64,000 bases of DNA, from positions 233,105 through 297,104 of the IMG/VR virus record IMGVR_UViG_3300025141_000016; one strand, given 5' to 3'. Below the pieces are notes generated by a model. The model was not told the origin of the DNA. It was given only the letters and a program-made list of their open reading frames with translations, and ran no database searches. The translations under genes and the position numbers were made by a program. Positions 3-59,671 of this stretch are shown here, in pieces (within the stretch, counting starts at the first letter, position 1; each line of letters starts with the position of its first letter).

Positions 3-2144
3 ATTCCGGGGCGTTCTGACACATTACTGGAACTGATTGAGGGGGCGGGGTTCCAAGGACGCGCAGCACAGCGTTACGCCGACCGATTCCGTGAAACCCT
101 CGCTCAACAAAGCCGAGAGGTTGCCGCCAGCGCAAGTCGAGTCGCTGCCCGCTACCTCGTCGCAGACTGCAATCTGCGGCTTCCCTCTCATTCATGGATT
201 GACCCCAAGGGGAAGGTTCATTTGGTTCCCCTTATGCACGATGTCTGGGCCGAGGAAAAGATACGATCTACGCCCTCGATGCTGCGTTCGTTTGTGAAAC
301 GCTACAGGGAATACTATCCCGATGAACTCTATGAGATCGACCATCCGTGGACCAGTTTTCTGGTTGACCAAGGTTGGGTGAGGGTGGCGAACTTTCTGAA
401 CTTTGAGGGGAGAGATCACCTTGTTTCCCCGCACGCTTGGGAGTCAGCCGCAGACCTCATCATCAACTGTGTGGTCAAGAAGCAGCTTGACCCCGAGACT
501 ACTGTCGTGACGGTCGCTGGATATGGGAAGCAGCGATACTCGGTGTCCCAGATCGTCAGGGAATGGGGTGGGCGCAAGGCCGAGGATCGGTTGTTTGGGG
601 CACTCATGGCCCGCACCGCTGCCCGACTTTGGTATCACGGGACTGAAAAGCGTTTTGAAGAGTTCAAGACCTTTGAGAGCCACACGTTTGGGTCTGACCC
701 CTCCGAAGTGCCTCTGTTCTTCTCGCCCTCCAAGTCCTTTGCAAAGATGCACGCCCAAGGACCGAAGGGGGTCATCTACACGGCGCGGCTGAAGTGGCGC
801 AAGGTGTTTGATAGCGCCAACTTGTATCGGGAATCTCGGTACTGGCCCCCCGAACGTGACGCTCTGACCCAAGAGGGGAAGGCCCTGTACGACGACCTCG
901 TAGGGGGCAAGGTGTTTCCCGGCATTGATGAAGACGATCTGCTTGACGGGTATCCGAGTCTTTGGTCGCAGGTGCTCCGTATGGATTACGATGTGATTGA
1001 AACGACGGAGTTCAAGCGGTGGCTCAAAAAGAACGGTTACGACGCGGCTTATGTCACGGGAGATGGTGAGCAGAACGTGTTTGTCTTCTCCCCGAGACAG
1101 GTCGAGGTTGTGGGCGTGCAAAGGGCCTCCGCATCCGTTTCTGCTTCCCGTGTCGCTGCTCGCCATCCCGTCGTGGACATTGACCCCAGCAAAGTAAAGT
1201 TCAAGATCCGATCCAGTAGCGATGCTGTGGCTGTGGAAATGCGGTATGGCGGTAAGCGCATTGGCGGCATGAACGCCCACAAGGTCCGTTATCCAGAAGA
1301 GAAGGACTGCCCTCGGGACGTTACCGCGTTGGCTGAACGCTTCCCCGAGTTGGTGACGGGAGAATGGAAGCGCAGCGATGGTGAGGTGTGGCGATACATC
1401 ACCGCGCTGGCCGTCTTCAAAGCGTTCATCACCGAGGAGGAGTTTCGGGGGTATGGGCTCGGCAAGAAGATGTATAAGGCACTGATGGGGGCTTGGTTCA
1501 AGAAGGTCGGACCATTTCTTTTCATGCCCTATAAGTGTGACGGGGGTTCGGGCACGTCACCAGACGCGATGCGGGTTTGGCACTCTTTAGCCAAGGAGTT
1601 TCCATCAAGTGGCGACGTGGTTGCGGTGATGAAGAATCCGCGTGTGGCTCGGGGGCAGTTACCCCAGTACCGAAAGAGGGCACACACCCCCGACTCCAGC
1701 GAGGAGGTCGAGAACTGGGTGGATGACTTTGGGCGGGAAAACAACTACACGCCTGGAACCTGTGACCTCAACCGTGGCGACTGCGACATGATGTCAAACG
1801 TCTTCGCGGACTGGTTTGAGGACCAGACTGGCGTGGGGCTTCAGATATGGGCCGGTCAGGGGTTCATCCCTCCTCTCGGGAAGGATGCCAATGACCTCTG
1901 GGTCATGCTTTCGGGGGACAAAGCCCACAAGAAAGGCGAGAAACCCCTCTCCCATGTGGTCGTCGTCTGGGGGGATTGGGTCATTGACCTTACAGGTCGT
2001 CAGTTCGGTTCCAAGTACAAGGCCCCTGTGTACTCTCTTTCGGAGTTCAAGAAGCGGTGGGCCACCGTTGGGAAGGCCCGTCGGGCTGACCGAGGGATCA
2101 ACAACCTCCGACGGATGATGCTCCAGAACTCCAGCGATTGGTAG
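3..2144 (+). CDS. Tag-B polyprotein, 5'-truncated: unknown domain + ART-like + GNAT + transglutaminase/papain-like domain
   Basis: Frame of ORF 222..2144 is open back to the window start and includes ASASRVAARYL (129-158). ART-like: WYHGT..FFSPS..GYDA..VFSPRQV. GNAT: EFRGYGLGKKMY. C-H-D triad: GDCDMMS..SHVVV..IDLTGRQF. Confidence 0.75.
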   Translation: MPGRSDTLLELIEGAGFQGRAAQRYADRFRETLAQQSREVAASASRVAARYLVADCNLRLPSHSWIDPKGKVHLVPLMHDVWAEEKIRSTPSMLRSFVKRYREYYPDELYEIDHPWTSFLVDQGWVRVANFLNFEGRDHLVSPHAWESAADLIINCVVKKQLDPETTVVTVAGYGKQRYSVSQIVREWGGRKAEDRLFGALMARTAARLWYHGTEKRFEEFKTFESHTFGSDPSEVPLFFSPSKSFAKMHAQGPKGVIYTARLKWRKVFDSANLYRESRYWPPERDALTQEGKALYDDLVGGKVFPGIDEDDLLDGYPSLWSQVLRMDYDVIETTEFKRWLKKNGYDAAYVTGDGEQNVFVFSPRQVEVVGVQRASASVSASRVAARHPVVDIDPSKVKFKIRSSSDAVAVEMRYGGKRIGGMNAHKVRYPEEKDCPRDVTALAERFPELVTGEWKRSDGEVWRYITALAVFKAFITEEEFRGYGLGKKMYKALMGAWFKKVGPFLFMPYKCDGGSGTSPDAMRVWHSLAKEFPSSGDVVAVMKNPRVARGQLPQYRKRAHTPDSSEEVENWVDDFGRENNYTPGTCDLNRGDCDMMSNVFADWFEDQTGVGLQIWAGQGFIPPLGKDANDLWVMLSGDKAHKKGEKPLSHVVVVWGDWVIDLTGRQFGSKYKAPVYSLSEFKKRWATVGKARRADRGINNLRRMMLQNSSDW

Positions 2145-2366
2145 CTACCGTTTGAGGAAGGCGGCGGCGACACCCCATCCCTTCGACGTGAGCCGACGGG
2201 GCTCTTTCTTGGTGATCCAGCCCTTTGTCAGTGCATGGTGGTGGTAGGGGCAAGGCCCCGAAACCGGGATGGAACCCAGAGGGTTTTTCAAGCAGTGGTC
2301 GGCCCACTTGATCATCACCTTCCGAGTCATCTGGTTGATGAACGCCTCTTCGCCTTTCGATCTCAT
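2145..2366 (-). CDS. Small hypothetical protein
   Basis: ATG at 2366 preceded by AGGAG; stop abuts the stop of the convergent gene. Confidence 0.55.
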   Translation of the reverse strand: MRSKGEEAFINQMTRKVMIKWADHCLKNPLGSIPVSGPCPYHHHALTKGWITKKEPRRLTSKGWGVAAAFLKR

Positions 2367-2416
2367 AGGTATCTCCTGCCCCACTATACCGAGGGGGTGC
2401 GCTTCATCTGTACCCC

Positions 2417-2460: not shown

Positions 2461-3474
2461 ATGTCCGAACTTCACCTGTATGACTTCGACGGAACACTGT
2501 TCCGAAGTCCCCATGAGCCTGCGGTGTGGGATGGTCAGTGGTGGAACGACGTGCGCTCCCTGATCCCCCCGTGTGTCCCACAGAAGCCGGGGGCTGATTG
2601 GTGGGTCAACCAAACTGTCAGCAGTGCCAAGCAGTCGATCTCCGACCCAGACGTGTTTGCCATGATGATCACAGGGAGGAATGCAAACTCGGGTCTTCGG
2701 TTCCGGGTGCCAGAACTCCTCAAACAGCGAGGGCTCAACTTCGATGAGGTCCATCTGACCCCCGTTAGCAGCACCCTGGGGTACAAGAAGAAGCTGCTGG
2801 GGAATACGTTGGGGCGGTATCCCCTCATCGACACCGTGCGGATGTGGGACGACAGACCCTCACACCTCCGAGCCTTCGCGCAGGTTGCGGAGAAGATGGG
2901 GATTGACCCCGAAAACATCCATGCCACCCAGGTCCGGGCCAAGTCCAAAGACCCCGAGTGCGAAGAAGACAGCCCAGCAGGGGGTGGTTTCCTGTCAGAC
3001 CCCCCTCCAATCGGAGACGTGTGCCGATATGTAGGGGTTTTTCTTGATGCTTCTTCCAAGGCAGCCCTGTCACATGCGTTCCCTTTTGCCCACAACAAGA
3101 TCAAGAACGACCATGTGACCCTCTGCCTTGGCCCCGCTCTTGGGGGAAACATAGCGGAGGGTGCCCTCGATCTCCTGGGAACGAAGGTACGCATGAAGGT
3201 GATTGGCTACGCCGAGGATGAGGATGGGCAAGCAGTAGTGGTTTCTGTTCCCCCCGGACTCATCTCGGACGCTTCCAGAATCCCTCATGTCACCTTGTCC
3301 ATCTCGGACTCGGTGCAGTCCAAGTACAGCAACACTCTCCTCCGCAAAGGGTGGGAGCGTGTTCGCGGCCCCGCCATCAGTGGGGTGATTGATATGTTTC
3401 CGCGCTCCATGCGAAGGCAAGCAAGTGCAGTTCGGGTAGCCTTCCTGCATTCTCGCTTGGGCCGTAGCGGGTAG
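2461..3474 (+). CDS. HAD-family (Swiss-army-knife type) phosphatase fused to 2H phosphoesterase; RNA end-healing enzyme; C-terminal tag B
   Basis: YDFDGTLF..ITGR..WDDR (HAD) and two HVTL motifs (2H). Start moved to ATG 2461, 30 nt after a class I motif. Confidence 0.8.
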   Translation: MSELHLYDFDGTLFRSPHEPAVWDGQWWNDVRSLIPPCVPQKPGADWWVNQTVSSAKQSISDPDVFAMMITGRNANSGLRFRVPELLKQRGLNFDEVHLTPVSSTLGYKKKLLGNTLGRYPLIDTVRMWDDRPSHLRAFAQVAEKMGIDPENIHATQVRAKSKDPECEEDSPAGGGFLSDPPPIGDVCRYVGVFLDASSKAALSHAFPFAHNKIKNDHVTLCLGPALGGNIAEGALDLLGTKVRMKVIGYAEDEDGQAVVVSVPPGLISDASRIPHVTLSISDSVQSKYSNTLLRKGWERVRGPAISGVIDMFPRSMRRQASAVRVAFLHSRLGRSG

Positions 3475-3483
3475 CCTCTCTAT
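3469..3483 (+). promoter_or_regulatory. Class I motif
   Basis: GGGTAG-cctct-CTAT, before 3513. Confidence 0.7.
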
Positions 3484-4838: not shown

Positions 4839-4845
4839 GGCGGCG

Positions 4846-5667
4846 ATGACCCCTTCAAGCCAACGTGTAGCTTCCCGGTGGGCGAAGTCCCAAGCCAACT
4901 GGACGCTGCCCTATCTGGAAAAACTCATCAAGGCAGCCGAGGGTGACCCCACAGGGTGGGGGGAGAGTAGTCCTGCCGCCCGCGTCCTGCGGCAGATGAT
5001 CAAGTCCTCCGGGTTCGGGAACCTTGACCCGTTCCCAGTAGGTGAACTGTGGGACTACTTGACCTCATACGATGTGGACTCCGACGAGATCGCGGTGTTG
5101 AAGAAAGTTCGACCCCCCCGAGCACGGAAAAGGAAGGTAGGTCCGACATTCTACGAAGCACTACGCGCCTTTGAGCAGGCAACGGGGAAACACACGACCA
5201 CATCCCGCATTGACTGGGACAACGACCACCACTTGGCCCCGGCATTGTTGGCGATCACCAAAGCCGTCTCCAAGTTGCCCAAGCGGGCTGCCCGCCTCTG
5301 GCAGTCGGAAGTCAAGGAGGTGATGCTGGTCGGGCGCAACAAGAGCACCGAGGATGCCTCTTGGCGGGCCGGTGGCGTGATGCGTTTAGTGCTCGGAAAG
5401 AGTGGTTTCCACTCTGTGTCCCAAAGCGTTCCCCCCTGGCGCTCCCACATTGTCCATGAACTCGGGCACGCACTGGAGGACAAGTTGAATCTGGTGGTGA
5501 CCGCTTGGTCCTCGGACCCCTACGGCCATGAACCATACATTTCGGCATACGCGGACACGAACGCCTCGGAGGACTTTGCCGAGACGTTTCAGGCTTTGGA
5601 GATGGAGCCGAGCCGCCTACGACGAGTAGCCCCTGCCAAGTATGAGGACATGAAGGCTCGCTTTTGA
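4846..5667 (+). CDS. Tag-B protein with zincin metallopeptidase domain
   Basis: HELGH followed by SAYADTNASEDFAE; N-terminal SSQRVASRW; start moved to ATG 4846. Confidence 0.75.
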   Translation: MTPSSQRVASRWAKSQANWTLPYLEKLIKAAEGDPTGWGESSPAARVLRQMIKSSGFGNLDPFPVGELWDYLTSYDVDSDEIAVLKKVRPPRARKRKVGPTFYEALRAFEQATGKHTTTSRIDWDNDHHLAPALLAITKAVSKLPKRAARLWQSEVKEVMLVGRNKSTEDASWRAGGVMRLVLGKSGFHSVSQSVPPWRSHIVHELGHALEDKLNLVVTAWSSDPYGHEPYISAYADTNASEDFAETFQALEMEPSRLRRVAPAKYEDMKARF

Positions 5668-5673
5668 GGGGTG

Positions 5674-5688
5674 CGGTAAGTCCTCTAT
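5674..5688 (+). promoter_or_regulatory. Class I motif
   Basis: CGGTAA-gtcct-CTAT, before 5720. Confidence 0.75.
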
Positions 5689-12031: not shown

Positions 12032-12046
12032 CGGTAGGAGCCCTAT
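12032..12046 (+). promoter_or_regulatory. Class I motif
   Basis: CGGTAG-gagcc-CTAT, before 12075. Confidence 0.75.
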
Positions 12047-12074: not shown

Positions 12075-13097
12075 GTGAATCACCCGGACCCCAAACGAGT
12101 TGCTATCGCTGTGTCTCCGCAGCATCAGGCGGCTCGGGTAGCGGCTCGCTACGCCTCCTCCCCTCTGATAAAGGAGTTGGAGGAAGACTACCATTCCCTC
12201 TGGCATGACAAGCATGAAAGGGAGGACGGAAAGCCTCGGCTGTGCCCACTGAAAGCTGGGGTGCCCGATTGTGAGAAGATGACCCTCAAAGAGTTCGTTG
12301 CCAAGTGGAAGAGGCACGGGCTGAAGGCGGTAAAGGTCCAACGGCTTCCTACCACCTACTCCTACTATGACTGTGGGAGCCACGCCACGCTGCGGACGGA
12401 ACAGATCCATGGCAGCCGACTTTACCCCCAAGGCGACATCACGGTTGACTTGAACACCCCCATTCCTTGGAGCAAGGCGAAGAAAGGCGACTGGGTTCAA
12501 TGGCCATGGCACCACGGAGTGGTGATTGATCCCAAGCGCAAGATTGTGGAGAGTTGTTGGGGGGTAGACGGATGGGTGTTTCAACACCCCGTAGACCTTT
12601 CTACTTATGGGGCGAAGCCTACGGTTCATTCCGTGCATCCAAAAGAGAAGACCAAGACCGCCAGTTCTGATGGTCAGTGTATCGTCGGAGGCCAGTGCTT
12701 CCGCTACGCTGTCATGTGGGATGGCAAAGGCCCAGGATCATCCCCTGACGACATTGTTGTTCACGGGAACGTGCATGGCTTGGTCGGTCCTCACGCCTGG
12801 GTCGAGCGGAAGGACGGTCGCGTATTTGACTGGCAGACGGTTGAGGGGATCTGGGAGACGCTTGGCCGTCAACCTGACCCCAGCTACACCAAGCGCGGCT
12901 GGCCGAAGCGTGAGTTCTACGCGGAGTTCAAGCCGCGCAAGATGAAGCGGTACACCGCCGAAGACGCGCTGATCAACGGGATACGGAACCGGCACTACGG
13001 TCCCTGGGACGCGGATGAGGAGTACCGTCCTCCAATCCGATCAGCATCGCGGGTTGCCGCTCGCTACTTGATGGCTTCTCGGCGGCAACGCCGGTAG
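12075..13097 (+). CDS. Tag-B polyprotein: NlpC/P60-papain-like domain + transglutaminase-like domain
   Basis: YDC..HHGVV..ESCWG..HP..YG domain; KTAS linker; QCFRYA..HAWVE..FDWQ domain; tag B at both ends. Start GTG 12075 after AGGAG. Confidence 0.7.
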   Translation: MNHPDPKRVAIAVSPQHQAARVAARYASSPLIKELEEDYHSLWHDKHEREDGKPRLCPLKAGVPDCEKMTLKEFVAKWKRHGLKAVKVQRLPTTYSYYDCGSHATLRTEQIHGSRLYPQGDITVDLNTPIPWSKAKKGDWVQWPWHHGVVIDPKRKIVESCWGVDGWVFQHPVDLSTYGAKPTVHSVHPKEKTKTASSDGQCIVGGQCFRYAVMWDGKGPGSSPDDIVVHGNVHGLVGPHAWVERKDGRVFDWQTVEGIWETLGRQPDPSYTKRGWPKREFYAEFKPRKMKRYTAEDALINGIRNRHYGPWDADEEYRPPIRSASRVAARYLMASRRQRR

Positions 13098-13106
13098 CTT
13101 CTTTAT
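13092..13106 (+). promoter_or_regulatory. Class I motif, variant
   Basis: CGGTAG-cttct-TTAT, before 13140. Confidence 0.65.
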
Positions 13107-13139: not shown

Positions 13140-13589
13140 ATGTCCAAGACCCTTACTGGATCTGACCGTAAACGCCTCATCCGCCTTGCTTCTACCCTCC
13201 CCACGGGGTCAGATGAGCGGAAGGCTATCCTTGCTGGGCTTCACCATGTCGCCGTCCACAAGACCGCCTCCAAGAAGACCACCCTCTCGGCAGATTTGAA
13301 GTTGAAGGACGGGACCGTGTACGCGAAGGGATCGCGTGCAGAGGTGTTCTTCTCGGAGCGCAACCCCTCCATGTCCGAGGTGGAGATTGAGGGTAGGAAG
13401 ATCAAACTCCGCACGGTCAGTCTCCACAAGTACCTCCGTGGTTTTCCAAAGCCCCCCTCCACGAGAGCCTTGCAGAAGATGGACAGTGAGGCTTCCGGGC
13501 CAACGGTCAGTGGGGTACGCAACGTCGAGATGGACGGCTATGGTCCCGATGGGTCACCCTCGTGGATGCTGGCCATGGGGCTCATCTGA
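13140..13589 (+). CDS. Tag-A protein, unknown cargo domain
   Basis: N-terminal LIRLASTLPTGSDERKAILAGL, then KTAS. Confidence 0.75.
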   Translation: MSKTLTGSDRKRLIRLASTLPTGSDERKAILAGLHHVAVHKTASKKTTLSADLKLKDGTVYAKGSRAEVFFSERNPSMSEVEIEGRKIKLRTVSLHKYLRGFPKPPSTRALQKMDSEASGPTVSGVRNVEMDGYGPDGSPSWMLAMGLI

Positions 13590-13636: not shown

Positions 13637-13669
13637 CGAATGTCCGTAGAGGGCACAACGGAGAATGGT

Positions 13670-14125
13670 ATGAGCGCATCCCCCCAGAAAGTAGCCGAGC
13701 GGTGGGCCTCCGAAGCCAAGTTCTTCCGTGGCCTCCACAGTCGCAACAAGGGCATCTTCTTTCGTGGGGCCAAGAACCCCGGTGCCGGTGGCGGGGCTGG
13801 CTTTGGTGCTCTGGGACGTGGCCTTTATCTCGCGTGGGACAAGGGGATCGCCCAGTTCTTTGCTGACCGAGCCGGGGGTCAGGTATACGCCTACAAGATT
13901 CCGTCCAGCCTCAAACTGCTCGATGCCCAGAGCAGCGAGATGGCGACGATCAAGGAAGGGATGGGATTCAAGCCCTGGCAGTATTCAGACGATCCCATGT
14001 ACGCCGCTGTCGTCACAGCCGAGGTAAAAGACCTTGGATACGACGGGGTGATCTCCGACAAAGCGGCAGATGGCCTTGTCTTGTTCGATCCCCGTAAAGC
14101 GAAGCTGGTGGACCTACCGGAGTGA
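13670..14125 (+). CDS. Tag-B protein with ADP-ribosyltransferase-like domain
   Basis: FFRG..LGRGLYLA..AQFFA..GYDGVI..VLFDP; N-terminal SPQKVAERW. Confidence 0.65.
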   Translation: MSASPQKVAERWASEAKFFRGLHSRNKGIFFRGAKNPGAGGGAGFGALGRGLYLAWDKGIAQFFADRAGGQVYAYKIPSSLKLLDAQSSEMATIKEGMGFKPWQYSDDPMYAAVVTAEVKDLGYDGVISDKAADGLVLFDPRKAKLVDLPE

Positions 14126-15521: not shown

Positions 15522-15536
15522 CGGTAGGTCGTCTAT
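15522..15536 (+). promoter_or_regulatory. Class I motif
   Basis: CGGTAG-gtcgt-CTAT, before 15581. Confidence 0.75.
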
Positions 15537-22228: not shown

Positions 22229-22230
22229 GG

Positions 22231-22257: not shown

Positions 22258-22276
22258 TGAGCGGGGGGAGGTTCCT

Positions 22277-33305: not shown

Positions 33306-33320
33306 AGGTAATCAGTCTAT
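33306..33320 (+). promoter_or_regulatory. Class I motif
   Basis: AGGTAA-tcagt-CTAT, before 33365. Confidence 0.7.
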
Positions 33321-33364: not shown

Positions 33365-33772
33365 ATGACTGATGCCCTGATTTCCCAACTATTCGACTTT
33401 GGCAGTCTCGGGCTGTTTGCTGCGTTCCTTGTCTATCAGCATCTCGGGATGCAGAGGCGGCTCGATGGGCTGACCTCTGGTTTCCAGGCCCAGTTGAAAG
33501 AGATCGAGAAAGCCCATGAGGGTCGTATCGAGATCATGCGTGGTCGATATGATGTGGTGATGGATCGGGTGAGGGCAGAGGGGGCGGCGGCTCTCCAGCA
33601 CTGTATGGCCCAGCGAGATGAACTCATCGCCAAACTCGGGGAGCAGGTTGATGGGGTCGCCAAGAAGATGGATGCCTCGATGTTCAAGCAAGAGGTGGCC
33701 CTCGCAAAGATCGAGGAGGCATTGGACGAGATTCGGCGCGAGCGGGAGCGGCGTTGCTTCAGAGATCGGTAG
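33365..33772 (+). CDS. Holin-like membrane protein (N-terminal TM + coiled coil)
   Basis: FGSLGLFAAFLVY TM segment, then coiled coil; class I promoter. Confidence 0.5.
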   Translation: MTDALISQLFDFGSLGLFAAFLVYQHLGMQRRLDGLTSGFQAQLKEIEKAHEGRIEIMRGRYDVVMDRVRAEGAAALQHCMAQRDELIAKLGEQVDGVAKKMDASMFKQEVALAKIEEALDEIRRERERRCFRDR

Positions 33773-33781
33773 TTCCCCTAT
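33767..33781 (+). promoter_or_regulatory. Class I motif
   Basis: CGGTAG-ttccc-CTAT, before 33819. Confidence 0.75.
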
Positions 33782-39259: not shown

Positions 39260-39274
39260 CGGTAGTGCGTCTAT
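39260..39274 (+). promoter_or_regulatory. Class I motif
   Basis: CGGTAG-tgcgt-CTAT, before 39310. Confidence 0.75.
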
Positions 39275-40060: not shown

Positions 40061-40075
40061 CGGTAGCTCCTCTAT
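40061..40075 (+). promoter_or_regulatory. Class I motif
   Basis: CGGTAG-ctcct-CTAT, before 40107. Confidence 0.75.
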
Positions 40076-41819: not shown

Positions 41820-42244
41820 TGACCTACCGTTATTCGTGAAGCGAGGGAGAGGAGCGGTCGCTCCCCCATGAACATCCCCATCCTCCGGGCTTTGACGAGG
41901 AAGACATTGTGGTTGACGAAGAACTGAAAAAGGAAGCCTCCCAAGATCGCCGGATCCTCATCCGTCTCGCCTCCACTCTCCCTGCGGGAGATGGGATGCG
42001 CCGAGCCATCCTGGCTGGGCTCCGACGGAGAGCCGCCAAGGAACCTTGGAAGCACTGGGGGAAGACGCAAAAGGAGATGCTTGGGATAGCCAAGGCCGAG
42101 ATGAAGCGGCTCAATGTCAGGAGCCCAGATGATCTCCGCAAGGCGCGAAAGAAGCATAAGCCCAGTCTCCCGTCCGATGGGTCCAGCGGTCAATATGACG
42201 CTTGGACCGAAACGCTCGCACAGGTCTTGGAGATGGAGGAATGA
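41819..42244 (+). pseudogene. Tag-A gene interrupted by an in-frame TGA at codon 7 (or starting at GTG 41909)
   Basis: TGATG-coupled ATG 41819 is in frame with ORF 41909..42244; single TGA at 41837-41839. Confidence 0.5.
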
Positions 42245-43386: not shown

Positions 43387-43401
43387 CGGTAGGCCGCCTA
43401 T
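43387..43401 (+). promoter_or_regulatory. Class I motif
   Basis: CGGTAG-gccgc-CTAT, before 43448. Confidence 0.75.
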
Positions 43402-43447: not shown

Positions 43448-44677
43448 TTGTACGCAAATCTTACCGAGGCTTTGAAACGCCGTATGATCCAAGAGATCAG
43501 GTACTTGTGGTCGAAAGACCCGAAGTACCGGGACTCCTTGGTGCCTAACATCCAGGGGCGGTTCTCATTTCGGGAGCGCCCCCAGGAAGCCATCATCCTG
43601 AAAAGCCAGAGTGCGAGCCCCTTTCAACTGGCGGCAGATCACTTTCAGGGCACCATCATCGCGTACTGCTTCCTGACCAAAGTGTATGGGCAGAATGGAA
43701 CGAGCATCGAGTGGGTGCGTGAGAACGGTGCTGCGATCCGTGCCAATAACGGGGTCTTCCCGTCTCCCCCTGGGGTCTACTACATCGAGGTCCGCGAAGA
43801 GGTCATCACCTATCGGGGCGAGCAGACGGAAAGGCTTGTCTTCTATGTGGACCCGTTGCTGGATGTGATTGACGAGACGGCGACGATGCTTGGCCCTCGT
43901 CTATATGAGGTCGGCGCAGGGGCTTTCCACCCCGGAAGCCTTCAAGTCTACGAGATGCCGGGAAACATTCTCTTGTATGAGGGGGTCAACTACACGGCGG
44001 ATGCCACCACAGGGCAAATCACTTTGGCGGCCCCCCTCCCTTCCAACACGTCAATGTCGGTGGATTACCGCTACGCCGGGACCAGCACTGGCCCGTTCCC
44101 CCTCCCCGAGAACGGCGCTGATGTGGATGCTATCCCCGGAGTGGTTCTCGCCTTTGGGCGCAGGGCCTATGACGGGGACATTATGGCGGTGGTTGTCACG
44201 GAACGACGGGAAGATGTGGCCAAGGAGTTCGGCGGCAGGTGGGAGATGAGCATGGACATGGACATTATGGCCCGTGACGTGTACGCCCAAGGGGAGATCA
44301 CTGACCGCACCCTCATGTACCTCCACACGGAGGCACGGGAGAGGCTTTCCACCGAGGGAATCGAGATCACGTCCGTCAGCATGGGTGGTGAGGCCGAAGA
44401 AATCTACGACGAGAATGGCGACGATTACTTCTACACGGCTTCCCTATCGTTGAGCGTTATGACTGACTGGGCCATCCACGTTCCGCTCGGGAGGACCGTG
44501 ATGCGCGTGATCCCCGCCACTGTCGGACAGGAGAAGATGGCGGCAGGCTTGGACGACGCACAACTGATCGAGATGGGGTCACCTACGCGCCTCATCGCCA
44601 CAGACAACTTGGGCCTCGTGTCGATCTCGGACCCGTGGTTCCGTGATCGCACCCGCAACTACGAGGTCATTCGGTAG
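43448..44677 (+). CDS. Probable neck / tail-completion protein
   Basis: Class I promoter; DATTGQITL..VDYRY beta module also seen in the sheath. Confidence 0.5.
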   Translation: MYANLTEALKRRMIQEIRYLWSKDPKYRDSLVPNIQGRFSFRERPQEAIILKSQSASPFQLAADHFQGTIIAYCFLTKVYGQNGTSIEWVRENGAAIRANNGVFPSPPGVYYIEVREEVITYRGEQTERLVFYVDPLLDVIDETATMLGPRLYEVGAGAFHPGSLQVYEMPGNILLYEGVNYTADATTGQITLAAPLPSNTSMSVDYRYAGTSTGPFPLPENGADVDAIPGVVLAFGRRAYDGDIMAVVVTERREDVAKEFGGRWEMSMDMDIMARDVYAQGEITDRTLMYLHTEARERLSTEGIEITSVSMGGEAEEIYDENGDDYFYTASLSLSVMTDWAIHVPLGRTVMRVIPATVGQEKMAAGLDDAQLIEMGSPTRLIATDNLGLVSISDPWFRDRTRNYEVIR

Positions 44678-44686
44678 CAATCCTAT
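44672..44686 (+). promoter_or_regulatory. Class I motif
   Basis: CGGTAG-caatc-CTAT, before 44719. Confidence 0.75.
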
Positions 44687-46623: not shown

Positions 46624-46638
46624 CGGTAAGTCTCCTAT
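46624..46638 (+). promoter_or_regulatory. Class I motif
   Basis: CGGTAA-gtctc-CTAT, before 46680. Confidence 0.75.
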
Positions 46639-46679: not shown

Positions 46680-47000
46680 ATGACTGAACCTACTCGCCGG
46701 ATGCTGATCCGATTTGCGTCCACCCTTCCTGTGGGATCAGACGAACGTCGGACCATCCTCGCTGGACTGGACAAGCAGGGTTCCGTGGAGTCCTTTGAGA
46801 AGGAACTCGCCATACAGTTACGTTTGCATACGGGCTTGGGTCCAAAGGATCAGATGGGCCTGAAGGGTCGCACCGTGTGGCTTGCCGATGGAAAGGGTGA
46901 GGTACTGATCTACGATACGACTGCCCGTGGGACGGTGCTCAACTACAAGGGCAAGGAATACAAGTCGGTAAGGGACTTGATGAAGTCCCTTTCTCGGTAG
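46680..47000 (+). CDS. Small tag-A protein
   Basis: LIRFASTLPVGSDERRTILAGL, then KQGS. Confidence 0.75.
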   Translation: MTEPTRRMLIRFASTLPVGSDERRTILAGLDKQGSVESFEKELAIQLRLHTGLGPKDQMGLKGRTVWLADGKGEVLIYDTTARGTVLNYKGKEYKSVRDLMKSLSR

Positions 47001-47009
47001 GCCGCCTAT
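46995..47009 (+). promoter_or_regulatory. Class I motif
   Basis: CGGTAG-gccgc-CTAT, before the sheath gene at 47117. Confidence 0.75.
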
Positions 47010-52625: not shown

Positions 52626-52666
52626 CCGAGTGCCCCTTCCCGTAAGTGTCGGGAAGGGGCTCTCGG
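52626..52666 (+). terminator. GC-rich stem-loop after the sheath gene
   Basis: CCGAG-T-GCCCCTTCCCG / CGGGAAGGGGC-T-CTCGG; no U-tract. Confidence 0.55.
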
Positions 52667-52678
52667 TAGGTCGCCTAT
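52664..52678 (+). promoter_or_regulatory. Class I motif
   Basis: CGGTAG-gtcgc-CTAT, before 52720. Confidence 0.75.
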
Positions 52679-52719: not shown

Positions 52720-54150
52720 ATGCCTACCTTCACCTCTGATGATCGCAAGATTCTGGTCCGGTACGCCTCGACGCTGCCCTCCGGGTCGCCGGAGCGGAAG
52801 GCTGTTTTGGCGGGTCTTTCCCTGACTGGTTCCGGTTCCGGTGCTGCAAACGCGAAGTATCTGGACAGCCTGCCCTCTGGCACGAAGGCCAAGATTCTGA
52901 AGAACGTGGCCAAGCATTATGGTGTCTCCGTCTCCGAGATCGAGGACGAACTGACAGATCGGGATGCAGAAGCCCTGTATGAGTACATCGCAAACGACAA
53001 TGCCTTGCGGATGCAGGTTTACCGCGACTTCAAGCAGCAGCGGTTGGCTGCAAGCAAGAACGCTGCCGGATACGCCCGTAAGTCCATGCGTGGGGGAGAC
53101 TACGGAGGGGCTGGGAGCAGCAAGCAGTTGGTGAAGGACATGATTGCCAACATGCGACGGGTGAAGACCAACGCTGAACGAAGCCATGCCGTTGAGCAGG
53201 TGCAGCACGCGGAAGCTGCGAAGTCCATCACCTCCCAACAGGCCAAAGAGGTCATGGGAGCCATTGGTAAGACCGCATCGGCCCGTACCGCCGAGGACTG
53301 GATGGAAGACGCGGTGAAGCGCCCTGGTCGCCTTCACAAGTTCTTCGGTATCCCCGAGGACGAGACGATCCCCATGTCGAAGATCGACGGTGAGATCGCC
53401 AAGTTGAAGAAGAAAGACGACCGCACGAAGGACGAGGAGTCCCTGCTCGATGCCCTCAACCTGGGCAAGACCTTCAAGGAAATGAAGAAGTCGGCTGCGG
53501 GAGAGGAACACTACATCGGGGACGAGGAAGCGGGGGTGTACTGGAGCGTCGATGAAACCCCTCGCGGATGGTTCGTCCAGGCTTGGGTGGATGGTGGTCA
53601 CTTCACACATGACTTCCCGAAGGATGGTCCTTACCCCACCGAAGGGGAAGCCATGGAAGCTGGATGGTCACAAGGGCTTGAATGGGTGGTGACCAACGAT
53701 GTGAGCCTTGCGGGCGAACCCAAGACCTTCCCCGCCTGGGCTCGCAGGAACAGATGGCAGCCTCGCACAGCCTCCTCCGATGATCGCATCGCTCTCATCC
53801 GCTACGCCTCTACCCTTCCTGTGGGGTCAGATGAGCGCAAAGCCATCCTGTCGGGGTTGAAGACTGCTGCCCTTGATTCCGTGTCTCTCGGTGAGATGAT
53901 GGTGTCGGCGGCAGCCCAGGCTCGGCTGTTCTATCGCCTTGACATGAAGCGGTTTGTGGGTGTGTACGAGGAAGTGGGTCAGAATCTTATCCGAATCGGG
54001 CATACCTCTGACCCCGATGACCGTGCGTTCCTTGTCAGCGAGGTCGATAAGGGGCTGGCCGATTTGAAGAAGCACAACATCACCGCTATGTCGGAGGCGT
54101 TGGAGCACATGACCCGTGCCTACGCACTCGTTTCCAAAGCGTATCGCTGA
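52720..54150 (+). CDS. Tag-A polyprotein with about five small modules
   Basis: Two tag-A copies; RLAA, KTAS-ARTA, KSAA, RTAS, KTAA linkers. Confidence 0.75.
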   Translation: MPTFTSDDRKILVRYASTLPSGSPERKAVLAGLSLTGSGSGAANAKYLDSLPSGTKAKILKNVAKHYGVSVSEIEDELTDRDAEALYEYIANDNALRMQVYRDFKQQRLAASKNAAGYARKSMRGGDYGGAGSSKQLVKDMIANMRRVKTNAERSHAVEQVQHAEAAKSITSQQAKEVMGAIGKTASARTAEDWMEDAVKRPGRLHKFFGIPEDETIPMSKIDGEIAKLKKKDDRTKDEESLLDALNLGKTFKEMKKSAAGEEHYIGDEEAGVYWSVDETPRGWFVQAWVDGGHFTHDFPKDGPYPTEGEAMEAGWSQGLEWVVTNDVSLAGEPKTFPAWARRNRWQPRTASSDDRIALIRYASTLPVGSDERKAILSGLKTAALDSVSLGEMMVSAAAQARLFYRLDMKRFVGVYEEVGQNLIRIGHTSDPDDRAFLVSEVDKGLADLKKHNITAMSEALEHMTRAYALVSKAYR

Positions 54151-55403
54151 TGGCTCGACGTACTGCCAAGGCTGATGTGACCCCGGTTCGACAGCGGACC
54201 CAGTACACCTGCATGAGCACCTCCCTGATGATGTGCCTCCAGGCCCTTGGGTACGACGTTGACGAGGATGAGGTCAACAAGGTCATGGGCGCACGTCCCA
54301 TGAAGGGTGCAGCGTGGGAGCAGGCTCTTGCCGCTGCCCAGCACTTCGGAGTCCGAGGAACACTCGTGACCCCTTCGACTGTGCGGCAGTTGAAGGAATG
54401 GACCGACGCGGGCAAGCCCGTGATGATCGCCTGGAATCCCGAGGGTCGAGAGTGGTCACACGCCAGCGTCGTCTTCGACGTGACCCCGTGCAAGGAACAT
54501 GGGTTCGACGTTCATGTCGCTGACCCCAACATCCCTGACCCCGACGAGACAGTCCGGGTCATGCCCAAGTCCGAGTTCTACAAGAAGTGGTACGAGAAGT
54601 GGCCGAACTACTTGGTTCGCCGTCCCGCTCTCATGCTGGACCGGGAGATCACTCCTGATGGTCGTCAGGTGATGGCCTTCAAGAAAGCATCCTCTCGTGG
54701 CTGGGAGAAAACCATCGCTTCTTGGAGCAAGGAGTACAAGACCCCAGAGGGGAAGGTTTTAGGGACCGTGGTTATCGACCGGGGCAAGGTCAACTGGAGG
54801 CCGAACCAGTTGATTGAGGGTTTCGTTCGTCCGCAGGTCATCAGTCGTTCCCGAAGTGGGGAAGAAATCCCCAGTAACGAGAAACTGACCTCTGTGGCAG
54901 ATGCCTGGGTGCGGAAGAACCATGGGAGACAAGTCATGGCTTCCGGTTCCGCTGACCCCAGCCGGGTGGCGGCCAGATATGCCTCGCGCTGTGCCAGTGG
55001 GGATAAAGCCCTCTGGGCGGGTCGGCGCAAGCCCACTTCCGGGGAAGTGGAATGGGCGAAGAATGCCAAGTGGCAGGATTGGGAGCCGCACCCACTCCCC
55101 GATGACCTCACCAAGTTTTTCAAGCGCACCCCAGATACGATTGAGGTGGGTCTTTCCGAGATCACCCCAATCCGGGCTCGGGAGAAAGGCATCGCTAACG
55201 CCAACCGATTCATGTGGTTGGCGTACTGGGGGAAGATGCCCCGGCGAAAGCCCATTTCGTTGAGAGAAAACGATGACGGCACCTACACCATCCTTGATGG
55301 GAACTCGACCTATGCCAACGCCAAGATGAGTGGGTGGAGACACATGTGGGGTCGAGTTGAAGAGTCCCCCTCTACAACGCGGCTATCGCGGAGGATCCCA
55401 TGA
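54150..55403 (+). CDS. Tag-B polyprotein: C39-like peptidase + unknown + ParB/Srx-like domain
   Basis: RQRTQYTC..SHASVV..VADP; KPI..YTILDGNSTY..GW; ADPSRVAARY. Confidence 0.72.
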   Translation: MARRTAKADVTPVRQRTQYTCMSTSLMMCLQALGYDVDEDEVNKVMGARPMKGAAWEQALAAAQHFGVRGTLVTPSTVRQLKEWTDAGKPVMIAWNPEGREWSHASVVFDVTPCKEHGFDVHVADPNIPDPDETVRVMPKSEFYKKWYEKWPNYLVRRPALMLDREITPDGRQVMAFKKASSRGWEKTIASWSKEYKTPEGKVLGTVVIDRGKVNWRPNQLIEGFVRPQVISRSRSGEEIPSNEKLTSVADAWVRKNHGRQVMASGSADPSRVAARYASRCASGDKALWAGRRKPTSGEVEWAKNAKWQDWEPHPLPDDLTKFFKRTPDTIEVGLSEITPIRAREKGIANANRFMWLAYWGKMPRRKPISLRENDDGTYTILDGNSTYANAKMSGWRHMWGRVEESPSTTRLSRRIP

Positions 55404-56936: not shown

Positions 56937-56951
56937 CGGTAGGGAGGCTAT
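56937..56951 (+). promoter_or_regulatory. Class I motif
   Basis: CGGTAG-ggagg-CTAT, before 56977. Confidence 0.75.
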
Positions 56952-58256: not shown

Positions 58257-58264
58257 GGTGAACG

Positions 58265-59671
58265 GTGCCAACCAATGTAGTCAAGACACCAGCCGATGAG
58301 AAGAAGTGGGAGAAGGCCAAGGCCCGTGCGAAAGAGCAGGGGAAGGCCGAGAACTATGCCTACATCATGGGCATCTACAAGCAGATGAACCCCGAGAGGT
58401 TCAAGTCAGCCCAGCGGGTCACCGCCCGGTTTCGCGATGAGGACTATGTAGACCTGCTCCAGAGGAAAATCTCCCTAAAGGAGTTCCTCAAAAAGCACCC
58501 CAAGATCAAAGCAGTTGACACCCAACGACTCGATGCCCTGCCGGAAAGCGGATTGTCCAGAGGGTACGACTACGATTGCTTTGTCCATGCAGAACTGCGA
58601 GCCGTCCAGTTGAGCGAAGCCAAATCCTACCGAGAGGTAGACTGGGAACCCATCGGACTCGACGGTGCCGGGGCCAACCCACCCAGAGGAGCCGGGATCC
58701 CGTGGAGTGAGGCCAAGAAAGGGGACTGGGTTCGGTGGCCCGGACTCGGAGGCCATCACGGCGTGGTCATTGACCCCAACCGGAAGATTGTAGAGAGTTG
58801 TTGGGGCTACAAAGGCACCGTGTTCCAGCACCCGGTTGACTACCATCCCTACGGAGGCGGTGGTGAGGTTTTCCCCGTGCGCCCCAAAGTATCAGCCCAG
58901 CGGGTCGCCGCCAGATACGCAGCACAGCTTCCTTTGATGGACCCCCTCTACAACCTGCGGGAAGCCGCCAAGGAACTGCTCTTGCTGGAGGACCATCTGG
59001 GTCATGCCCAGAAGCACTGTCCTGACTGCATCCGTAAACATCTGCTCACCACGGAGGCACTGCTTGAAGAAGCAGTGCGCCTCGACACAGAAGGGGAGAT
59101 GTTGGGGTTGCTCTCACCGCTTCCGGCACAGGTACGGGAACTGTGGACAGCCTATCAAGATGGTCGCCCGGAGCATGAGATCGGGCAAGCCGCCCGTGTT
59201 TTGCGTAAGGGACTCGTAGAGGCTTCCGCCGATGTTCGTGTGGCTGCCCAGGCTGCAAAGCAGGGGAAGTATGCCTACATCATGGGGATCTACAAGGGCA
59301 TGAACCCCAAGGCTTCTGCTTCTAAGGTTGCTGTACGGTACTTGACGGCTCGGATGTCTTCAAAGATACGAAGAGCCATAGCGAAGTGGTACAAGAAAGA
59401 GAAATACACTTCGGAGCTTTATCCTGGATCCTACAAGCACAAGTGGAACAAGGAAAACCACCCGGATGTCTTGGAGAAGCGATTCAACAAGATGTATCGG
59501 GGTTTCGGAGGGGACCAGAGAGAACACTTCGCAACCAAGGTGTTGGACTACTACGAACACCCAAGCTGGGCTCGGGGGTACGAAATCTTGGCGCAAGCGT
59601 GGGAAGATACGGATCGCTACTTCAACGAACCGGTGGAAGATCCAGACCCTTACGACGAGGAGGACTACTAA
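58265..59671 (+). CDS. Tag-B polyprotein including an NlpC/P60-papain-like domain
   Basis: Three tag-B copies, duplicated YAYIMGIYKxMNP, domain paralogous to 12075..13097. Confidence 0.75.
   Translation: MPTNVVKTPADEKKWEKAKARAKEQGKAENYAYIMGIYKQMNPERFKSAQRVTARFRDEDYVDLLQRKISLKEFLKKHPKIKAVDTQRLDALPESGLSRGYDYDCFVHAELRAVQLSEAKSYREVDWEPIGLDGAGANPPRGAGIPWSEAKKGDWVRWPGLGGHHGVVIDPNRKIVESCWGYKGTVFQHPVDYHPYGGGGEVFPVRPKVSAQRVAARYAAQLPLMDPLYNLREAAKELLLLEDHLGHAQKHCPDCIRKHLLTTEALLEEAVRLDTEGEMLGLLSPLPAQVRELWTAYQDGRPEHEIGQAARVLRKGLVEASADVRVAAQAAKQGKYAYIMGIYKGMNPKASASKVAVRYLTARMSSKIRRAIAKWYKKEKYTSELYPGSYKHKWNKENHPDVLEKRFNKMYRGFGGDQREHFATKVLDYYEHPSWARGYEILAQAWEDTDRYFNEPVEDPDPYDEEDY

What the first reader, a model, noticed from the sequence alone, without database searches (positions are those of the whole stretch)
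3..59671. Tagged-cargo system: short peptide tags and putative cleavage linkers mark a genome-wide set of effector polyproteins
Seen: about 18 ORFs with mostly unrelated bodies share short recurring peptides (tag A in 6 ORFs, tag B in 11, LLP[IV]E in 1). The tags lie at termini or between domains. Domains are separated by [KR]-x-A-[SAG] linkers. Apart from the 5'-truncated first gene, these genes lie directly or operonically behind the same motif as the sheath, baseplate and lysin genes. I saw no tags in the replication genes. Known: T4 internal proteins use an N-terminal capsid-targeting sequence that the prohead protease removes, and phage 'polyvalent proteins' combine ART, GNAT, zincin, papain and RelA-like domains. 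Inference: a plug-and-play loading system in which any domain fused to a tag is packaged into the head, cut free at maturation and injected as an early host-takeover or anti-defence payload.
Basis: partly seen in the sequence, partly recalled or inferred. Interest (0 to 1): 0.95.

Follow-up and report, generated by a model that had tools for sequence, protein, structure and literature searches.

The report
Portable peptide tags on huge-phage late proteins
A 297-kb uncultivated marine phage marks about a dozen unrelated late proteins in this window with two short conserved peptide tags, which most likely send these proteins into the phage head as cargo; this has not been shown by experiment.

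Summary
I found two recurrent peptides, always in the coding frame. One is a 26-34-aa motif, DRxxLIRLASTLPxGSxERRxILAGL, with 9 copies in 6 ORFs. The other is a short motif, S-A-x-RVA[AS]R[YFW], with 9 strong copies in 5 ORFs and 1 weak copy in a sixth. LLP[IV]E occurs 3 times in one ORF. That gives 12-13 tagged ORFs, not about 18.

The tags sit at N-termini, between domains and at C-termini. None lies in a replication gene. Every complete tagged ORF lies in a transcription unit headed by GGTARN5CTAT (14 exact sites, all on the + strand, 0.16 expected). The same motif precedes the sheath, the endolysin and, elsewhere in the genome, the head operon.

The long tag is selected as protein. It recurs in 1,539 metagenomic protein clusters, mostly at residues 5-40, and is absent from Pfam, NCBIfam, PDB, GenBank phages and cellular genomes. 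AlphaFold2 predicts a confident helix-turn-helix.

Two results point to the capsid. In relatives, tagged genes cluster within 2 kb downstream of the major capsid gene. The tag's first helix also resembles the conserved C-terminal tail of this clade's head-maturation protease (hhalign P = 5.7e-5).

Packaging, cleavage and injection remain inferences. I rate this a new variant of a known kind: capsid-targeting sequences and polyvalent effectors.

The parts
3..2144 (+). Gene 1 (5'-truncated polyvalent-type protein). Short-tag copies at 117-170 and 1128-1175 flank an ART-PolyVal domain.
   Evidence: PF18760 at E = 7.8e-08 for residues 211-367. Tag HMM hits. Homologous to giant polyvalent ORFs in L001 and L016.
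4846..5667 (+). g4846: N-terminal short tag (MTPSSQRVASRW, 4843-4896) followed by a domain with an HELGH...EDFAETF zincin-like motif.
   Evidence: 20.2 bits. Zincin families score below threshold only. The start at 4846 is inferred from the end of g3513 at 4838.
12075..13097 (+). g12075: short tag at residues 21-26 (12114-12167) and again 13 residues from the C-terminus (13029-13082). The body shares a 143-aa domain with g58265.
   Evidence: (49.6% identity, E = 5e-30). Promoter motif at 12033.
13140..13589 (+). g13140: long tag at the N-terminus (13158-13259), then KTAS, then a small cargo domain.
   Evidence: 66.7 bits. One-mismatch promoter at 13093. AF2 model of residues 1-55.
13640..14125 (+). 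g13640: weak N-terminal short-tag variant (SASPQKVAERWAS, 13670-13720).
   Evidence: 10.8 bits, E = 0.026. This is the weakest member.
15581..17017 (+). g15581: long tag at the N-terminus (15584-15685) and near the C-terminus (16736-16837).
   Evidence: 51.4 and 56.9 bits. Promoter at 15523.
33819..35057 (+). g33819: long tag at the N-terminus (33828-33929) and internally (34257-34358), joined by a Lys-rich linker. It sits inside the replication gene block but has its own promoter.
   Evidence: Promoter at 33768.
40107..41819 (+). g40107: LLP[IV]E at 40113, 40521 and 40824 (N-terminus and two junctions). Contains the EKAAAS|WFDMFFKE junction, a phrog_6004 domain and a phrog_13953 domain.
   Evidence: Promoter at 40062 overlaps the upstream ATG, so the start at 40107 is inferred.
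41909..42244 (+). g41909: long tag (41939-42040) near the N-terminus. It is the second gene of the g40107 unit, and the Dps/ferritin-like g42241 follows.
46680..47000 (+). g46680: long tag at the N-terminus (46686-46787). The gene lies immediately upstream of the sheath gene.
   Evidence: 66.8 bits. Promoter at 46625.
52720..54150 (+). g52720: long tag at the N-terminus (52735-52836) and internally (53776-53877). The two copies flank a Fusello_VP2-like domain.
   Evidence: Promoter at 52665.
54150..55403 (+). g54150: N-terminal Peptidase_C39_2 domain, then a short tag (54945-54998), then a C-terminal domain. The homologue in relative L013 keeps only the peptidase.
58265..59671 (+). g58265: three short-tag copies (58394-58447, 58880-58924, 59300-59359) at domain junctions.
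3470..3483 (+). Promoter-like motif GGTARN5CTAT (heads g3513 and g4846).
5675..5688 (+). Promoter-like motif.
12033..12046 (+). Promoter-like motif (heads g12075).
13093..13106 (+). Promoter-like motif with one mismatch. Its TAG is the stop codon of g12075. It heads g13140 and g13640.
15523..15536 (+). Promoter-like motif (heads g15581).
33307..33320 (+). Promoter-like motif (heads g33365).
33768..33781 (+). Promoter-like motif (heads g33819).
39261..39274 (+). Promoter-like motif.
40062..40075 (+). Promoter-like motif (heads g40107 and g41909).
43388..43401 (+). Promoter-like motif (heads g43448, a tail-terminator-like gene).
44673..44686 (+). Promoter-like motif (heads the endolysin g44719).
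46625..46638 (+). Promoter-like motif (heads g46680).
46996..47009 (+). Promoter-like motif (heads the sheath gene 47117-52606).
52665..52678 (+). Promoter-like motif (heads g52720, g54150 and g55400).
56938..56951 (+). Promoter-like motif (heads g56977, g57567 and g58265).

Best explanation
The tags are portable address modules for virion (head) cargo of a huge marine myophage.

The long tag is a roughly 30-residue helix-turn-helix hairpin: helix 1 SDRxxLIRLAS, turn TLPxGS, helix 2 xERRxILAGL. It can be fused to either end of a protein, or placed between domains.

Inferred mechanism: helix 1 copies the C-terminal tail of the phage's own head-maturation protease. It would therefore dock tagged proteins to the same site inside the assembling procapsid, on the capsid protein or the scaffolding core, that recruits the protease. 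Proteins with two to four tags would bind with higher avidity, or would cross-link the core.

The short tag ([KR]-x-S-A-S-RVA[AS]R[YFW]) and the small-residue stretch after the long tag (G-L-x-K-[TAS]-A-[AS]) mark domain boundaries. They are the best candidates for sites where a protease frees the cargo domains. That protease could be the head-maturation protease or one of the tagged papain- or zincin-like peptidases.

The cargo includes an ADP-ribosyltransferase, C39/papain-like peptidases, a VP2-like DNA binder and many unknown domains. It would then leave the head with the DNA.

Shown here: that the tags exist, that they are selected as protein, that they are modular, that they are linked to the late promoter motif and to the capsid gene, and the predicted fold. 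Inferred: docking, cleavage and ejection.
For: - The tags are real and far beyond chance.
- Selection acts on the protein. Identity among the 9 long-tag copies is 0.60 and 0.71 at codon positions 1 and 2, and 0.35 at position 3.
- A profile search of 1.84 billion representatives gives 1,539 proteins at E <= 1e-3 and 282 at E <= 1e-10. Of the best 149, 129 start the tag within residue 15 and 77 carry 2-4 copies, some at the extreme C-terminus. Their bodies are unrelated; only 12 Pfam families are hit, including ADPrib_exo_Tox and pentapeptide repeats.
- Cargo is exchanged between differently tagged proteins, with a conserved K-x-A-A-S junction.
- All tagged ORFs lie in units headed by GGTARN5CTAT. 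The motif also heads the sheath and endolysin genes and, in the same genome, the operon with protease, scaffold-like protein, decoration protein and MCP (L181 8971). No tag is in a replication gene.
- In MCP-centred loci of relatives, 18 of 22 tag-bearing loci have the tag within 2 kb downstream of the MCP on the same strand, a zone holding 14% of the bases. Taking about 7 of 10 independent lineages gives a binomial P near 1e-4. In L097 the order is MCP, tag-X-tag protein, short-tag protein.
- The protease C-terminal tail GRxL[ST]xxExxxL[IV]RL[AG]xLL is conserved in 69 distinct homologues; LR745208 reads SSEARTLIRLASLLS. hhalign of tag against tail aligns 19 columns at P = 5.7e-5 and 66% probability. 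The control against the MCP gives P = 0.51.
- C-terminal regions of prohead proteases are proposed capsid-targeting elements in SPN3US (PMC7411985). For HK97 (Duda et al. 2013) this rests on my own knowledge.
- AF2 predicts helices at 7-19 and 25-49, with block-mean pLDDT of 95 over residues 11-30.
- [KR]xA[SAG] is enriched in tagged proteins (30 against 15.3) and in the head-module proteins of the same genome (17 against 6.6), but not in untagged proteins (39 against 38.7).
- Precedents: the T4 capsid-targeting sequence on the internal proteins and the Alt ADP-ribosyltransferase (PMC3012670, PMC7411985), and polyvalent proteins predicted to be packaged and processed (PMC5512222).
Against: - There is no direct evidence of packaging. 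No cultured phage carries the tag, so no virion proteome exists.
- RNA data were uninformative.
- This genome's own protease tail (SSAEIRVVVRLGSLLS) is diverged. The tag helix-1 HMM does not hit it at 5 bits or more, so the similarity holds only at the profile level, over 19 columns.
- The head module of this genome (L181) and of its closest relative (L124) has no long-tag gene next to the MCP.
- LR745208 has the protease tail but no detectable tagged cargo.
- Tags at extreme C-termini and in multiple copies differ from classical N-terminal propeptides.
- The 4-residue linker pattern is loose, and its enrichment could partly reflect local Ala/Lys-rich composition.
- Several tagged genes flank the sheath gene, which would also fit a tail destination.
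Confidence: 0.5

Rival explanations
1. The tags are docking modules for a different hub rather than the head interior. Candidates are the tail or sheath lumen (as with N-terminal loading signals of contractile injection systems), a phage-made intracellular compartment, or a multi-enzyme complex in the infected cell.
For: Tagged genes lie immediately on both sides of the giant sheath gene (g46680, g52720) and share its promoter motif. The same arrangement is seen in relative L013. A helix hairpin with a hydrophobic face is a generic protein-protein module. Multi-copy and C-terminal tags fit scaffold or dockerin-like logic.
Against: Relatives show linkage to the MCP gene. The tag resembles the head protease tail. 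Established knowledge holds that the tail lumen of myophages is filled by the tape-measure protein. I found no receptor candidate.
Confidence: 0.2
2. The short tag and the [KR]xA[SAG] stretches are cleavage or recognition sites only. They are used after delivery, or in the cytoplasm, by the phage's own papain- or zincin-like peptidase domains (polyvalent-protein autoprocessing) and have no addressing role. The long tag is then an unrelated oligomerisation domain.
For: The short tag repeats at domain junctions of giant polyvalent ORFs: 3 times in the 1519-aa ORF of L016, and also in L001. Peptidase domains are themselves tagged: g54150 has a C39-like domain and g4846 has HExxH. Iyer et al. predict such autoprocessing (PMC5512222).
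Against: Short tags also sit 5-25 residues from N-termini and about 13 residues from C-termini, where cleavage would release nothing useful. Short- and long-tag genes cluster together and next to the MCP in L097. The linker motif is also enriched in head morphogenesis proteins.
Confidence: 0.15
3. The repeats are conserved DNA elements rather than functional peptides. They could be recombination flanks for cassette exchange, or 5' mRNA or translation signals.
For: Tags often lie at the 5' ends of genes just downstream of the promoter motif, and they flank variable cargo like cassette borders.
Against: Third codon positions are only 35% identical, against 60-71% at positions 1 and 2. Only 38% of identical residues use the same codon. 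Copies also occur internally and at 3' ends. Conservation extends over 1,539 diverged clusters at the protein level.
Confidence: 0.03

Closest known systems
T4 capsid-targeting sequence (CTS) of internal proteins IPI-III and Alt
   Same: A short terminal peptide shared by otherwise unrelated late proteins, including an ADP-ribosyltransferase. It is portable to foreign proteins and removed by the prohead protease, and the cargo is ejected with the DNA (PMC3012670, PMC7411985).
   Different: There is no sequence similarity. The T4 CTS is 10-20 residues, N-terminal only and ends in L/I-x-E. Here the long tag is a 26-34-residue helix-turn-helix found at N-termini, internal sites and C-termini, in up to 4 copies, and no Glu-type site follows it. 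Function is untested here.
C-terminal capsid-targeting tail of prohead proteases (HK97 gp4; SPN3US gp245 C-terminal propeptide)
   Same: The tag's first 19 residues match the conserved C-terminal tail of this clade's own protease. Such tails are proposed to carry proteases into proheads (PMC7411985; Duda et al. 2013 from my own knowledge).
   Different: The function of this clade's tail is unknown. The similarity is short and holds only at the profile level. Spread of such a tail to hundreds of cargo families has not been described.
P22 scaffolding protein C-terminal helix-turn-helix coat-binding domain, and its use to load cargo into P22 VLPs
   Same: A small basic helix-turn-helix is sufficient to bring fused cargo inside a procapsid (PMC9965877, PMC12005531, PMC9962691). 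The tag is predicted to be a helix-turn-helix.
   Different: No detectable sequence or fold match to PDB entries. This is an analogy only.
Polyvalent proteins of phages (Iyer et al. 2017) and the phage P1 Dar/DdrB system
   Same: The domain repertoire overlaps: ART-PolyVal, papain/C39-like and zincin-like peptidases. Both sit in a late or structural gene context and are predicted to be packaged and proteolytically released (PMC5512222; PMC9024508).
   Different: Here the repertoire is largely split into many separate ORFs, each carrying a conserved tag. Conserved address tags and a common junction motif were not found in that paper by term search ('linker' 0, 'N-terminal signal' 0).
Propeptide-bearing ejection proteins of phiKZ-like giant phages (SPN3US, phiKZ, 201phi2-1)
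   Same: Many head-internal proteins carry propeptides cut at a shared motif by the prohead protease. Multiple motif copies occur per propeptide (PMC10052503).
   Different: This is a different phage lineage (MCP, protease and sheath related to phage G, Tunturi_5 and mycobacteriophage cluster C). The motif differs (A/S/G-x-E there). Those propeptides are long paralogous regions rather than a portable 30-residue module.
Encapsulin cargo-loading peptides; MIX/FIX markers of T6SS effectors; N-terminal signals of eCIS cargo
   Same: Short conserved peptides mark diverse cargo for one container or injection machine.
   Different: Unrelated sequences and machines. Listed only as functional analogues.

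Membership tests
Polyvalent proteins (Iyer et al. 2017) | Presence of a signature polyvalent-protein domain | tested here: met
   ART-PolyVal PF18760 in gene 1 scores 33.6-36 bits, above the 31.2-bit cut-off.
Polyvalent proteins (Iyer et al. 2017) | Two or more effector domains in one polypeptide, with a processing peptidase (MPTase or papain-like) | tested here: inconclusive
   Gene 1 has at least 3 segments separated by short tags, but only one is named. g54150 has a C39-like peptidase (E = 2.3e-08). The HExxH of g4846 scores below threshold. Most tagged ORFs carry a single cargo domain.
Polyvalent proteins (Iyer et al. 2017) | Late or structural gene neighbourhood in phages | tested here: met
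T4-type capsid-targeting sequence | N-terminal 10-20-residue peptide ending in the gp21 site L/I-x-E | tested here: not met
   Neither tag ends in L/I-x-E. LLP[IV]E has Pro at P3 and occurs in a single ORF. The tags are not confined to N-termini.
T4-type capsid-targeting sequence | Directs fused proteins into proheads and is removed at maturation | not testable with these tools
   Needs expression or virion mass spectrometry.
Scaffold-type helix-turn-helix coat-binding domain (P22 gp8 C-terminus) | Helix-turn-helix fold of about 30-40 residues | tested here: met
   AF2 predicts helices at 7-19 and 25-49, with block-mean pLDDT of 95 for residues 11-30.
Scaffold-type helix-turn-helix coat-binding domain (P22 gp8 C-terminus) | Sequence or structural relatedness to solved scaffolding domains | tested here: not met
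   The best PDB profile hit has E = 0.49 and is an antibody. No Foldseek hit reaches E < 1.
Prohead-protease C-terminal targeting tail of this clade | Sequence similarity to the conserved protease tail | tested here: met
   hhalign of A4 against A5 gives 19 columns, P = 5.7e-5 and 66% probability. The control gives P = 0.51. This genome's own tail is not hit by the single-motif HMM.
Prohead-protease C-terminal targeting tail of this clade | The tail actually mediates encapsidation | not testable with these tools
   Known for HK97 and proposed for SPN3US (PMC7411985). Untested for this clade.
Prohead-protease substrate set | The same cleavage motif occurs in the MCP, scaffold or protease and in the cargo | tested here: inconclusive
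   [KR]xA[SAG] is 17 observed against 6.6 expected in head proteins and 30 against 15.3 in tagged proteins. RKAASG, KLAASM and KEAASE occur in the protease, MCP and scaffold-like protein. No cleavage data exist.
Any curated protein family (Pfam-A, NCBIfam, PHROGs with function) | The tag region matches an existing model | tested here: not met
   No family covers the tags.

The most novel reading that the evidence does not exclude
A large clade of marine huge phages uses a sequence-readable packaging code. The code has two parts. One is a portable helix-turn-helix tag that evolved from, or converged on, the capsid-targeting tail of the head-maturation protease. The other is a short RVAxRY tag with a K-x-A-A-S junction.

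Any protein fused to these parts would be loaded into the head, released by proteolysis and delivered to the host. If so, the injected proteome of uncultivated phages (more than 1,500 protein families) could be predicted from sequence alone. The tag could also be reused as a natural protein-encapsidation handle.
Probability: 0.4. Interest if true: 0.85.

Novelty: new variant of a known kind. Interest (0 to 1): 0.72.

Why it matters
Huge phages encode hundreds of proteins of unknown role, and almost none of these phages is cultured. A tag that marks virion cargo would have three uses.
- It would give a sequence-only way to list the proteins a phage carries into the cell: host-takeover and anti-defence candidates.
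- It would show how a capsid-targeting signal can spread from a morphogenetic protease to unrelated genes.
- It would provide a compact natural handle for loading proteins into capsids.

The claim can be tested directly by co-expressing this phage's capsid genes with tagged reporters.

Tried and rejected
- Near and protein-level searches of GenBank phages with a tagged ORF and with a canonical tag found nothing.
- A word-seeded search of the short-tag region found only the window's own protein. The motif is too short for database-wide statistics.
- A PDB profile search and Foldseek on the tag model gave only chance-level hits.
- A genome-contig scan with a tagged protein found no cellular relatives.
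- RNA-seq evidence for the promoter and its timing was not obtainable. Only two weak RNA holders exist, kept as contigs, and nothing begins at the motif.
- LLP[IV]E as a third portable tag is rejected. It is not found in the relatives or in the 150 representatives, so it is a repeat within one protein.
- The DNA-element explanation is rejected on synonymous-site divergence.
- I considered a double-glycine leader for the adjacent C39-like peptidase. The hydrophobic register of the tag does not fit that leader (my inspection).
- Read-through of the single TAG between g12075 and g13140 is rejected as unnecessary. The TAG is part of a promoter motif, and g13140 starts with the canonical MSKTLT... 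N-terminus seen in hundreds of independent proteins.
- The helix-1 HMM did not hit this genome's own protease or its scaffold-like protein.

Full report
**What the window is.** The window is the last 64 kb (positions 233,105-297,104) of IMG/VR contig IMGVR_UViG_3300025141_000016, which is 297,104 bp long. The DNA occurs in marine metagenomes. GC content is about 59% and there are no tRNA genes.

The genes show a huge myophage:
- a replication block at 19973-38126 with helicase, RuvC, UvsX, SbcCD, exonuclease, sliding clamp, clamp loader and primase;
- a ribonucleotide reductase on the minus strand;
- a sigma-like factor at 38645;
- an endolysin at 44719;
- a 1,829-aa sheath protein at 47117-52606.

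The nearest GenBank records are the uncultured 485-kb phage LR745208.1 (sheath C-terminus 49% identical), Tunturiibacter phage Tunturi_5, Bacillus phage G and cluster C mycobacteriophages. Genes g43448, g46134 and g47117 are syntenic with the tail terminator, gp325 and sheath of Tunturi_5.

**The observation.** I translated all six frames and looked for shared words, then ran HMM searches. These gave two recurrent peptides, always on the + strand and in the coding frame.

The long motif has the consensus DRxxLIRLASTLPxGSxERRxILAGL. In the wider family it reads MxRTLTASDRxxLIRLASTLPxGSxERKAILAGLxKxA. It has 9 copies in 6 ORFs: g13140, g15581 (2), g33819 (2), g41909, g46680 and g52720 (2).

The short motif is [KR]-x-S-A-[SQ]-RVA[AS]R[YFW]. 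It has 9 strong copies in 5 ORFs: gene 1 (2), g4846, g12075 (2), g54150 and g58265 (3). A weak copy lies in g13640. Its core regex is seen 7 times in the called proteins, against 0.04 expected from shuffles.

LLP[IV]E occurs three times in g40107 only and is not found in relatives.

The two tags never share an ORF, but their genes are neighbours: g12075/g13140/g13640 and g52720/g54150. Copies lie within the first 5-40 residues, between recognisable domains, or within about 15 residues of the C-terminus.

The total is 12-13 tagged ORFs. The figure '6 ORFs' is reproduced, '11 ORFs' is not, and 'about 18' is too high.

**The promoter-like motif.** GGTARN5CTAT has 14 exact matches, all on the + strand, against 0.16 expected. 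A one-mismatch copy lies at 13093. Each site lies 21-108 nt upstream of a start codon.

Seven of the 12 complete tagged ORFs start directly behind it, and the other five are the second or third gene of such a unit (Fisher p = 0.003). The motif also heads the sheath and endolysin genes. Elsewhere in the same genome it heads the operon with head protease, scaffold-like protein, decoration protein and MCP (L181 position 8971).

No copy lies within the replication block between 15523 and 33307. The reading as a late promoter is an inference from this gene set. RNA data could not test it.

**The tags are selected as peptides and are portable.** Among the nine long-tag copies, identity is 0.60 and 0.71 at codon positions 1 and 2 but 0.35 at position 3. 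The protein, not the DNA, is therefore conserved.

A profile of the nine copies (A1) was searched against 1.84 billion cluster representatives. It found 1,539 proteins at E <= 1e-3 and 282 at E <= 1e-10. Of the best 149:
- 129 begin the tag within residue 15;
- 77 carry 2-4 copies, some ending the protein;
- their bodies are unrelated, with only 12 Pfam families hit, among them ADPrib_exo_Tox, pentapeptide repeats and Fusello_VP2.

All of the ten clusters I looked up are from metagenomes, and where a name is given it is 'hypothetical protein'. The nearest ESM Atlas clusters to g13140 are viral.

The tag is absent from every reference set searched:
- Pfam, PHROG functional families and NCBIfam;
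- PDB;
- GenBank phages;
- 185,579 cellular species genomes.

The same genome has further tags outside the window. L016 holds 5 long-tag copies and at least 5 short-tag copies, three of them inside a 1,519-aa polyvalent ORF.

Cargo is shuffled between tags. Residues 270-363 of g40107 are 75% identical to a domain that carries the long tag at its N-terminus in a relative. The junctions read KKTAAS|YFDMFFKE and EKAAAS|WFDMFFKE. The relative's homologue of g54150 keeps the C39-like peptidase but lacks the short tag and the C-terminal domain.

**The linker.** After the long tag the wider family continues G-L-x-K-[TAS]-A-[AGS]. Before RVAxRY one usually finds [KR]-x-S-A-[SAQ].

Counts of [KR]-x-A-[SAG] against per-protein shuffles:

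| Protein set | Observed | Expected |
|---|---|---|
| Tagged proteins, tags masked | 30 | 15.3 +/- 3.8 |
| Untagged window proteins | 39 | 38.7 |
| Six head-module proteins of the same genome | 17 | 6.6 +/- 2.5 |

In the head module the motif appears as RKAASG near the protease N-terminus, KLAASM near the MCP N-terminus and KEAASE near the end of the scaffold-like protein. This is what a shared maturation-cleavage motif would look like. However, the pattern is loose and no cleavage data exist.

**Fold of the long tag.** AlphaFold2, run on a 60-sequence alignment of N-terminal tags, gives helix 7-19, a turn at LPxGS and helix 25-49. Block-mean pLDDT is 95 over residues 11-30. Foldseek finds nothing meaningful, as expected for so small a hairpin.

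**Links to the head.** I fetched MCP-centred loci of the clade. The MCP is 87-94% identical across more than 580 IMG/VR stretches. Of the 22 loci that carry a long tag, 18 have it within 2 kb downstream of the MCP on the same strand, a zone that holds 14% of the bases scanned. These represent about seven independent lineages, giving a binomial P near 1e-4.

In L097 the order is MCP, then a 195-aa charged protein with the tag at both ends, then a protein starting MIQPSPSRVAARY.

I then recovered this genome's own head module (L181). It has no long tag. Short-tag-like N-termini do occur on a 904-aa nucleotidyltransferase protein (MRGSPSQVARRW) and on the next ORF (MLTPSAVRVAARAAS).

The C-terminal tail of the head-maturation protease is conserved across 69 distinct homologues as GRxL[ST]xxExxxL[IV]RL[AG]xLL. 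In LR745208 it reads SSEARTLIRLASLLS. A profile-profile comparison of the tag alignment with these tails aligns 19 columns at P = 5.7e-5 and 66% probability. The tag against the MCP gives P = 0.51.

C-terminal regions of prohead proteases are proposed capsid-targeting elements in SPN3US (PMC7411985). For HK97 (Duda et al. 2013) I cite this from my own knowledge, because the paper is not held.

There are caveats:
- This genome's own tail is diverged, and a single-motif HMM does not hit it.
- The closest relative (L124) has no tagged gene beside its MCP.

**Interpretation.** The best-supported reading is that these are address tags for head cargo. The long tag would be a docking hairpin that uses the protease's route into the procapsid. 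The short tag and the K-x-A-A-S stretches would be junction or processing motifs. The cargo would be a dispersed version of the polyvalent-protein repertoire (PMC5512222).

This matches the logic of the T4 capsid-targeting sequence on the internal proteins and Alt (PMC3012670, PMC7411985) and of propeptide-bearing ejection proteins in SPN3US (PMC10052503). It does so without sequence homology and with a different architecture.

The rival readings are:
- docking to another hub, such as the tail;
- cleavage sites only, with an unrelated oligomerisation domain;
- DNA-level repeats, largely refuted.

Packaging, cleavage and ejection are all inferred.

**Verdict.**
- It is a new variant of a known kind.
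- Interest is 0.72 and confidence in the head-cargo mechanism is about 0.5.

Noticed in passing
window 47117-52606: The sheath protein is 1,829 aa. Only the first roughly 560 and the last roughly 470 residues align to the Tunturi_5 sheath. The middle roughly 800 residues are unexplained insertions, and relatives keep the same giant size.
   Followed up: partly
window 13095-13097, 33770-33772, 44675-44677, 46998-47000: The TAG inside the promoter-like motif GGTAG doubles as the stop codon of the upstream gene. g12075 and g13140 are in the same frame, separated only by this TAG.
   Followed up: partly
window about 41380-41480 (g40107) and L097 11154-11798: A shared acidic motif KKHQF..E.NPNPKGNDKDGDGETNE (a DxDxDG-like, possibly Ca-binding, stretch) occurs in g40107 and in the MCP-adjacent tag-X-tag protein of a relative.
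   Followed up: no
L181 10001-11434, 11447-12820, 13746-14609 (same genome, outside the window): Head module of this genome: a protease with a conserved C-terminal LVRLGxLL tail; a very acidic scaffold-like protein with three EEASDEEEAKGKKARALRAKALRMLRLAD repeats; and a small 289-aa MCP that is about 89% identical to that of hundreds of other contigs 200-620 kb long.
   Followed up: partly
L181 1955-4666 and about 4666-5166: Two consecutive ORFs upstream of the head operon start with short-tag-like peptides (MRGSPSQVARRW, MLTPSAVRVAARAAS). The first carries a tRNA-nucleotidyltransferase-like domain.
   Followed up: partly
window 42241-43386: A Dps/ferritin-like protein (PF00210, E = 2.8e-06) is encoded directly after the tagged g41909. 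It carries no tag itself.
   Followed up: no
window 58265-59671: g58265 has an internal repeat, YAYIMGIYKxMNP...SA.[RK]V..R[YF], that occurs twice. A small helical module therefore precedes two of its three short tags.
   Followed up: no
window 60000-64000: GC drops to 0.52 and the genes switch to the minus strand. g63400(-) resembles Tunturi_5 gp322, a 'minor tail protein'. The window ends at the contig end.
   Followed up: no
window 38645-39253: A phage-encoded sigma-factor-like protein with region-4-type hits is a candidate reader of the GGTARN5CTAT motif.
   Followed up: no
window 12162-13028 and 58460-58890: g12075 and g58265 share a 143-aa domain (49.6% identity). By eye, its GDWV.WP...HHGVVIDP..KIVESCWG pattern resembles NlpC/P60 or permuted-papain enzymes. 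No family model matched.
   Followed up: partly
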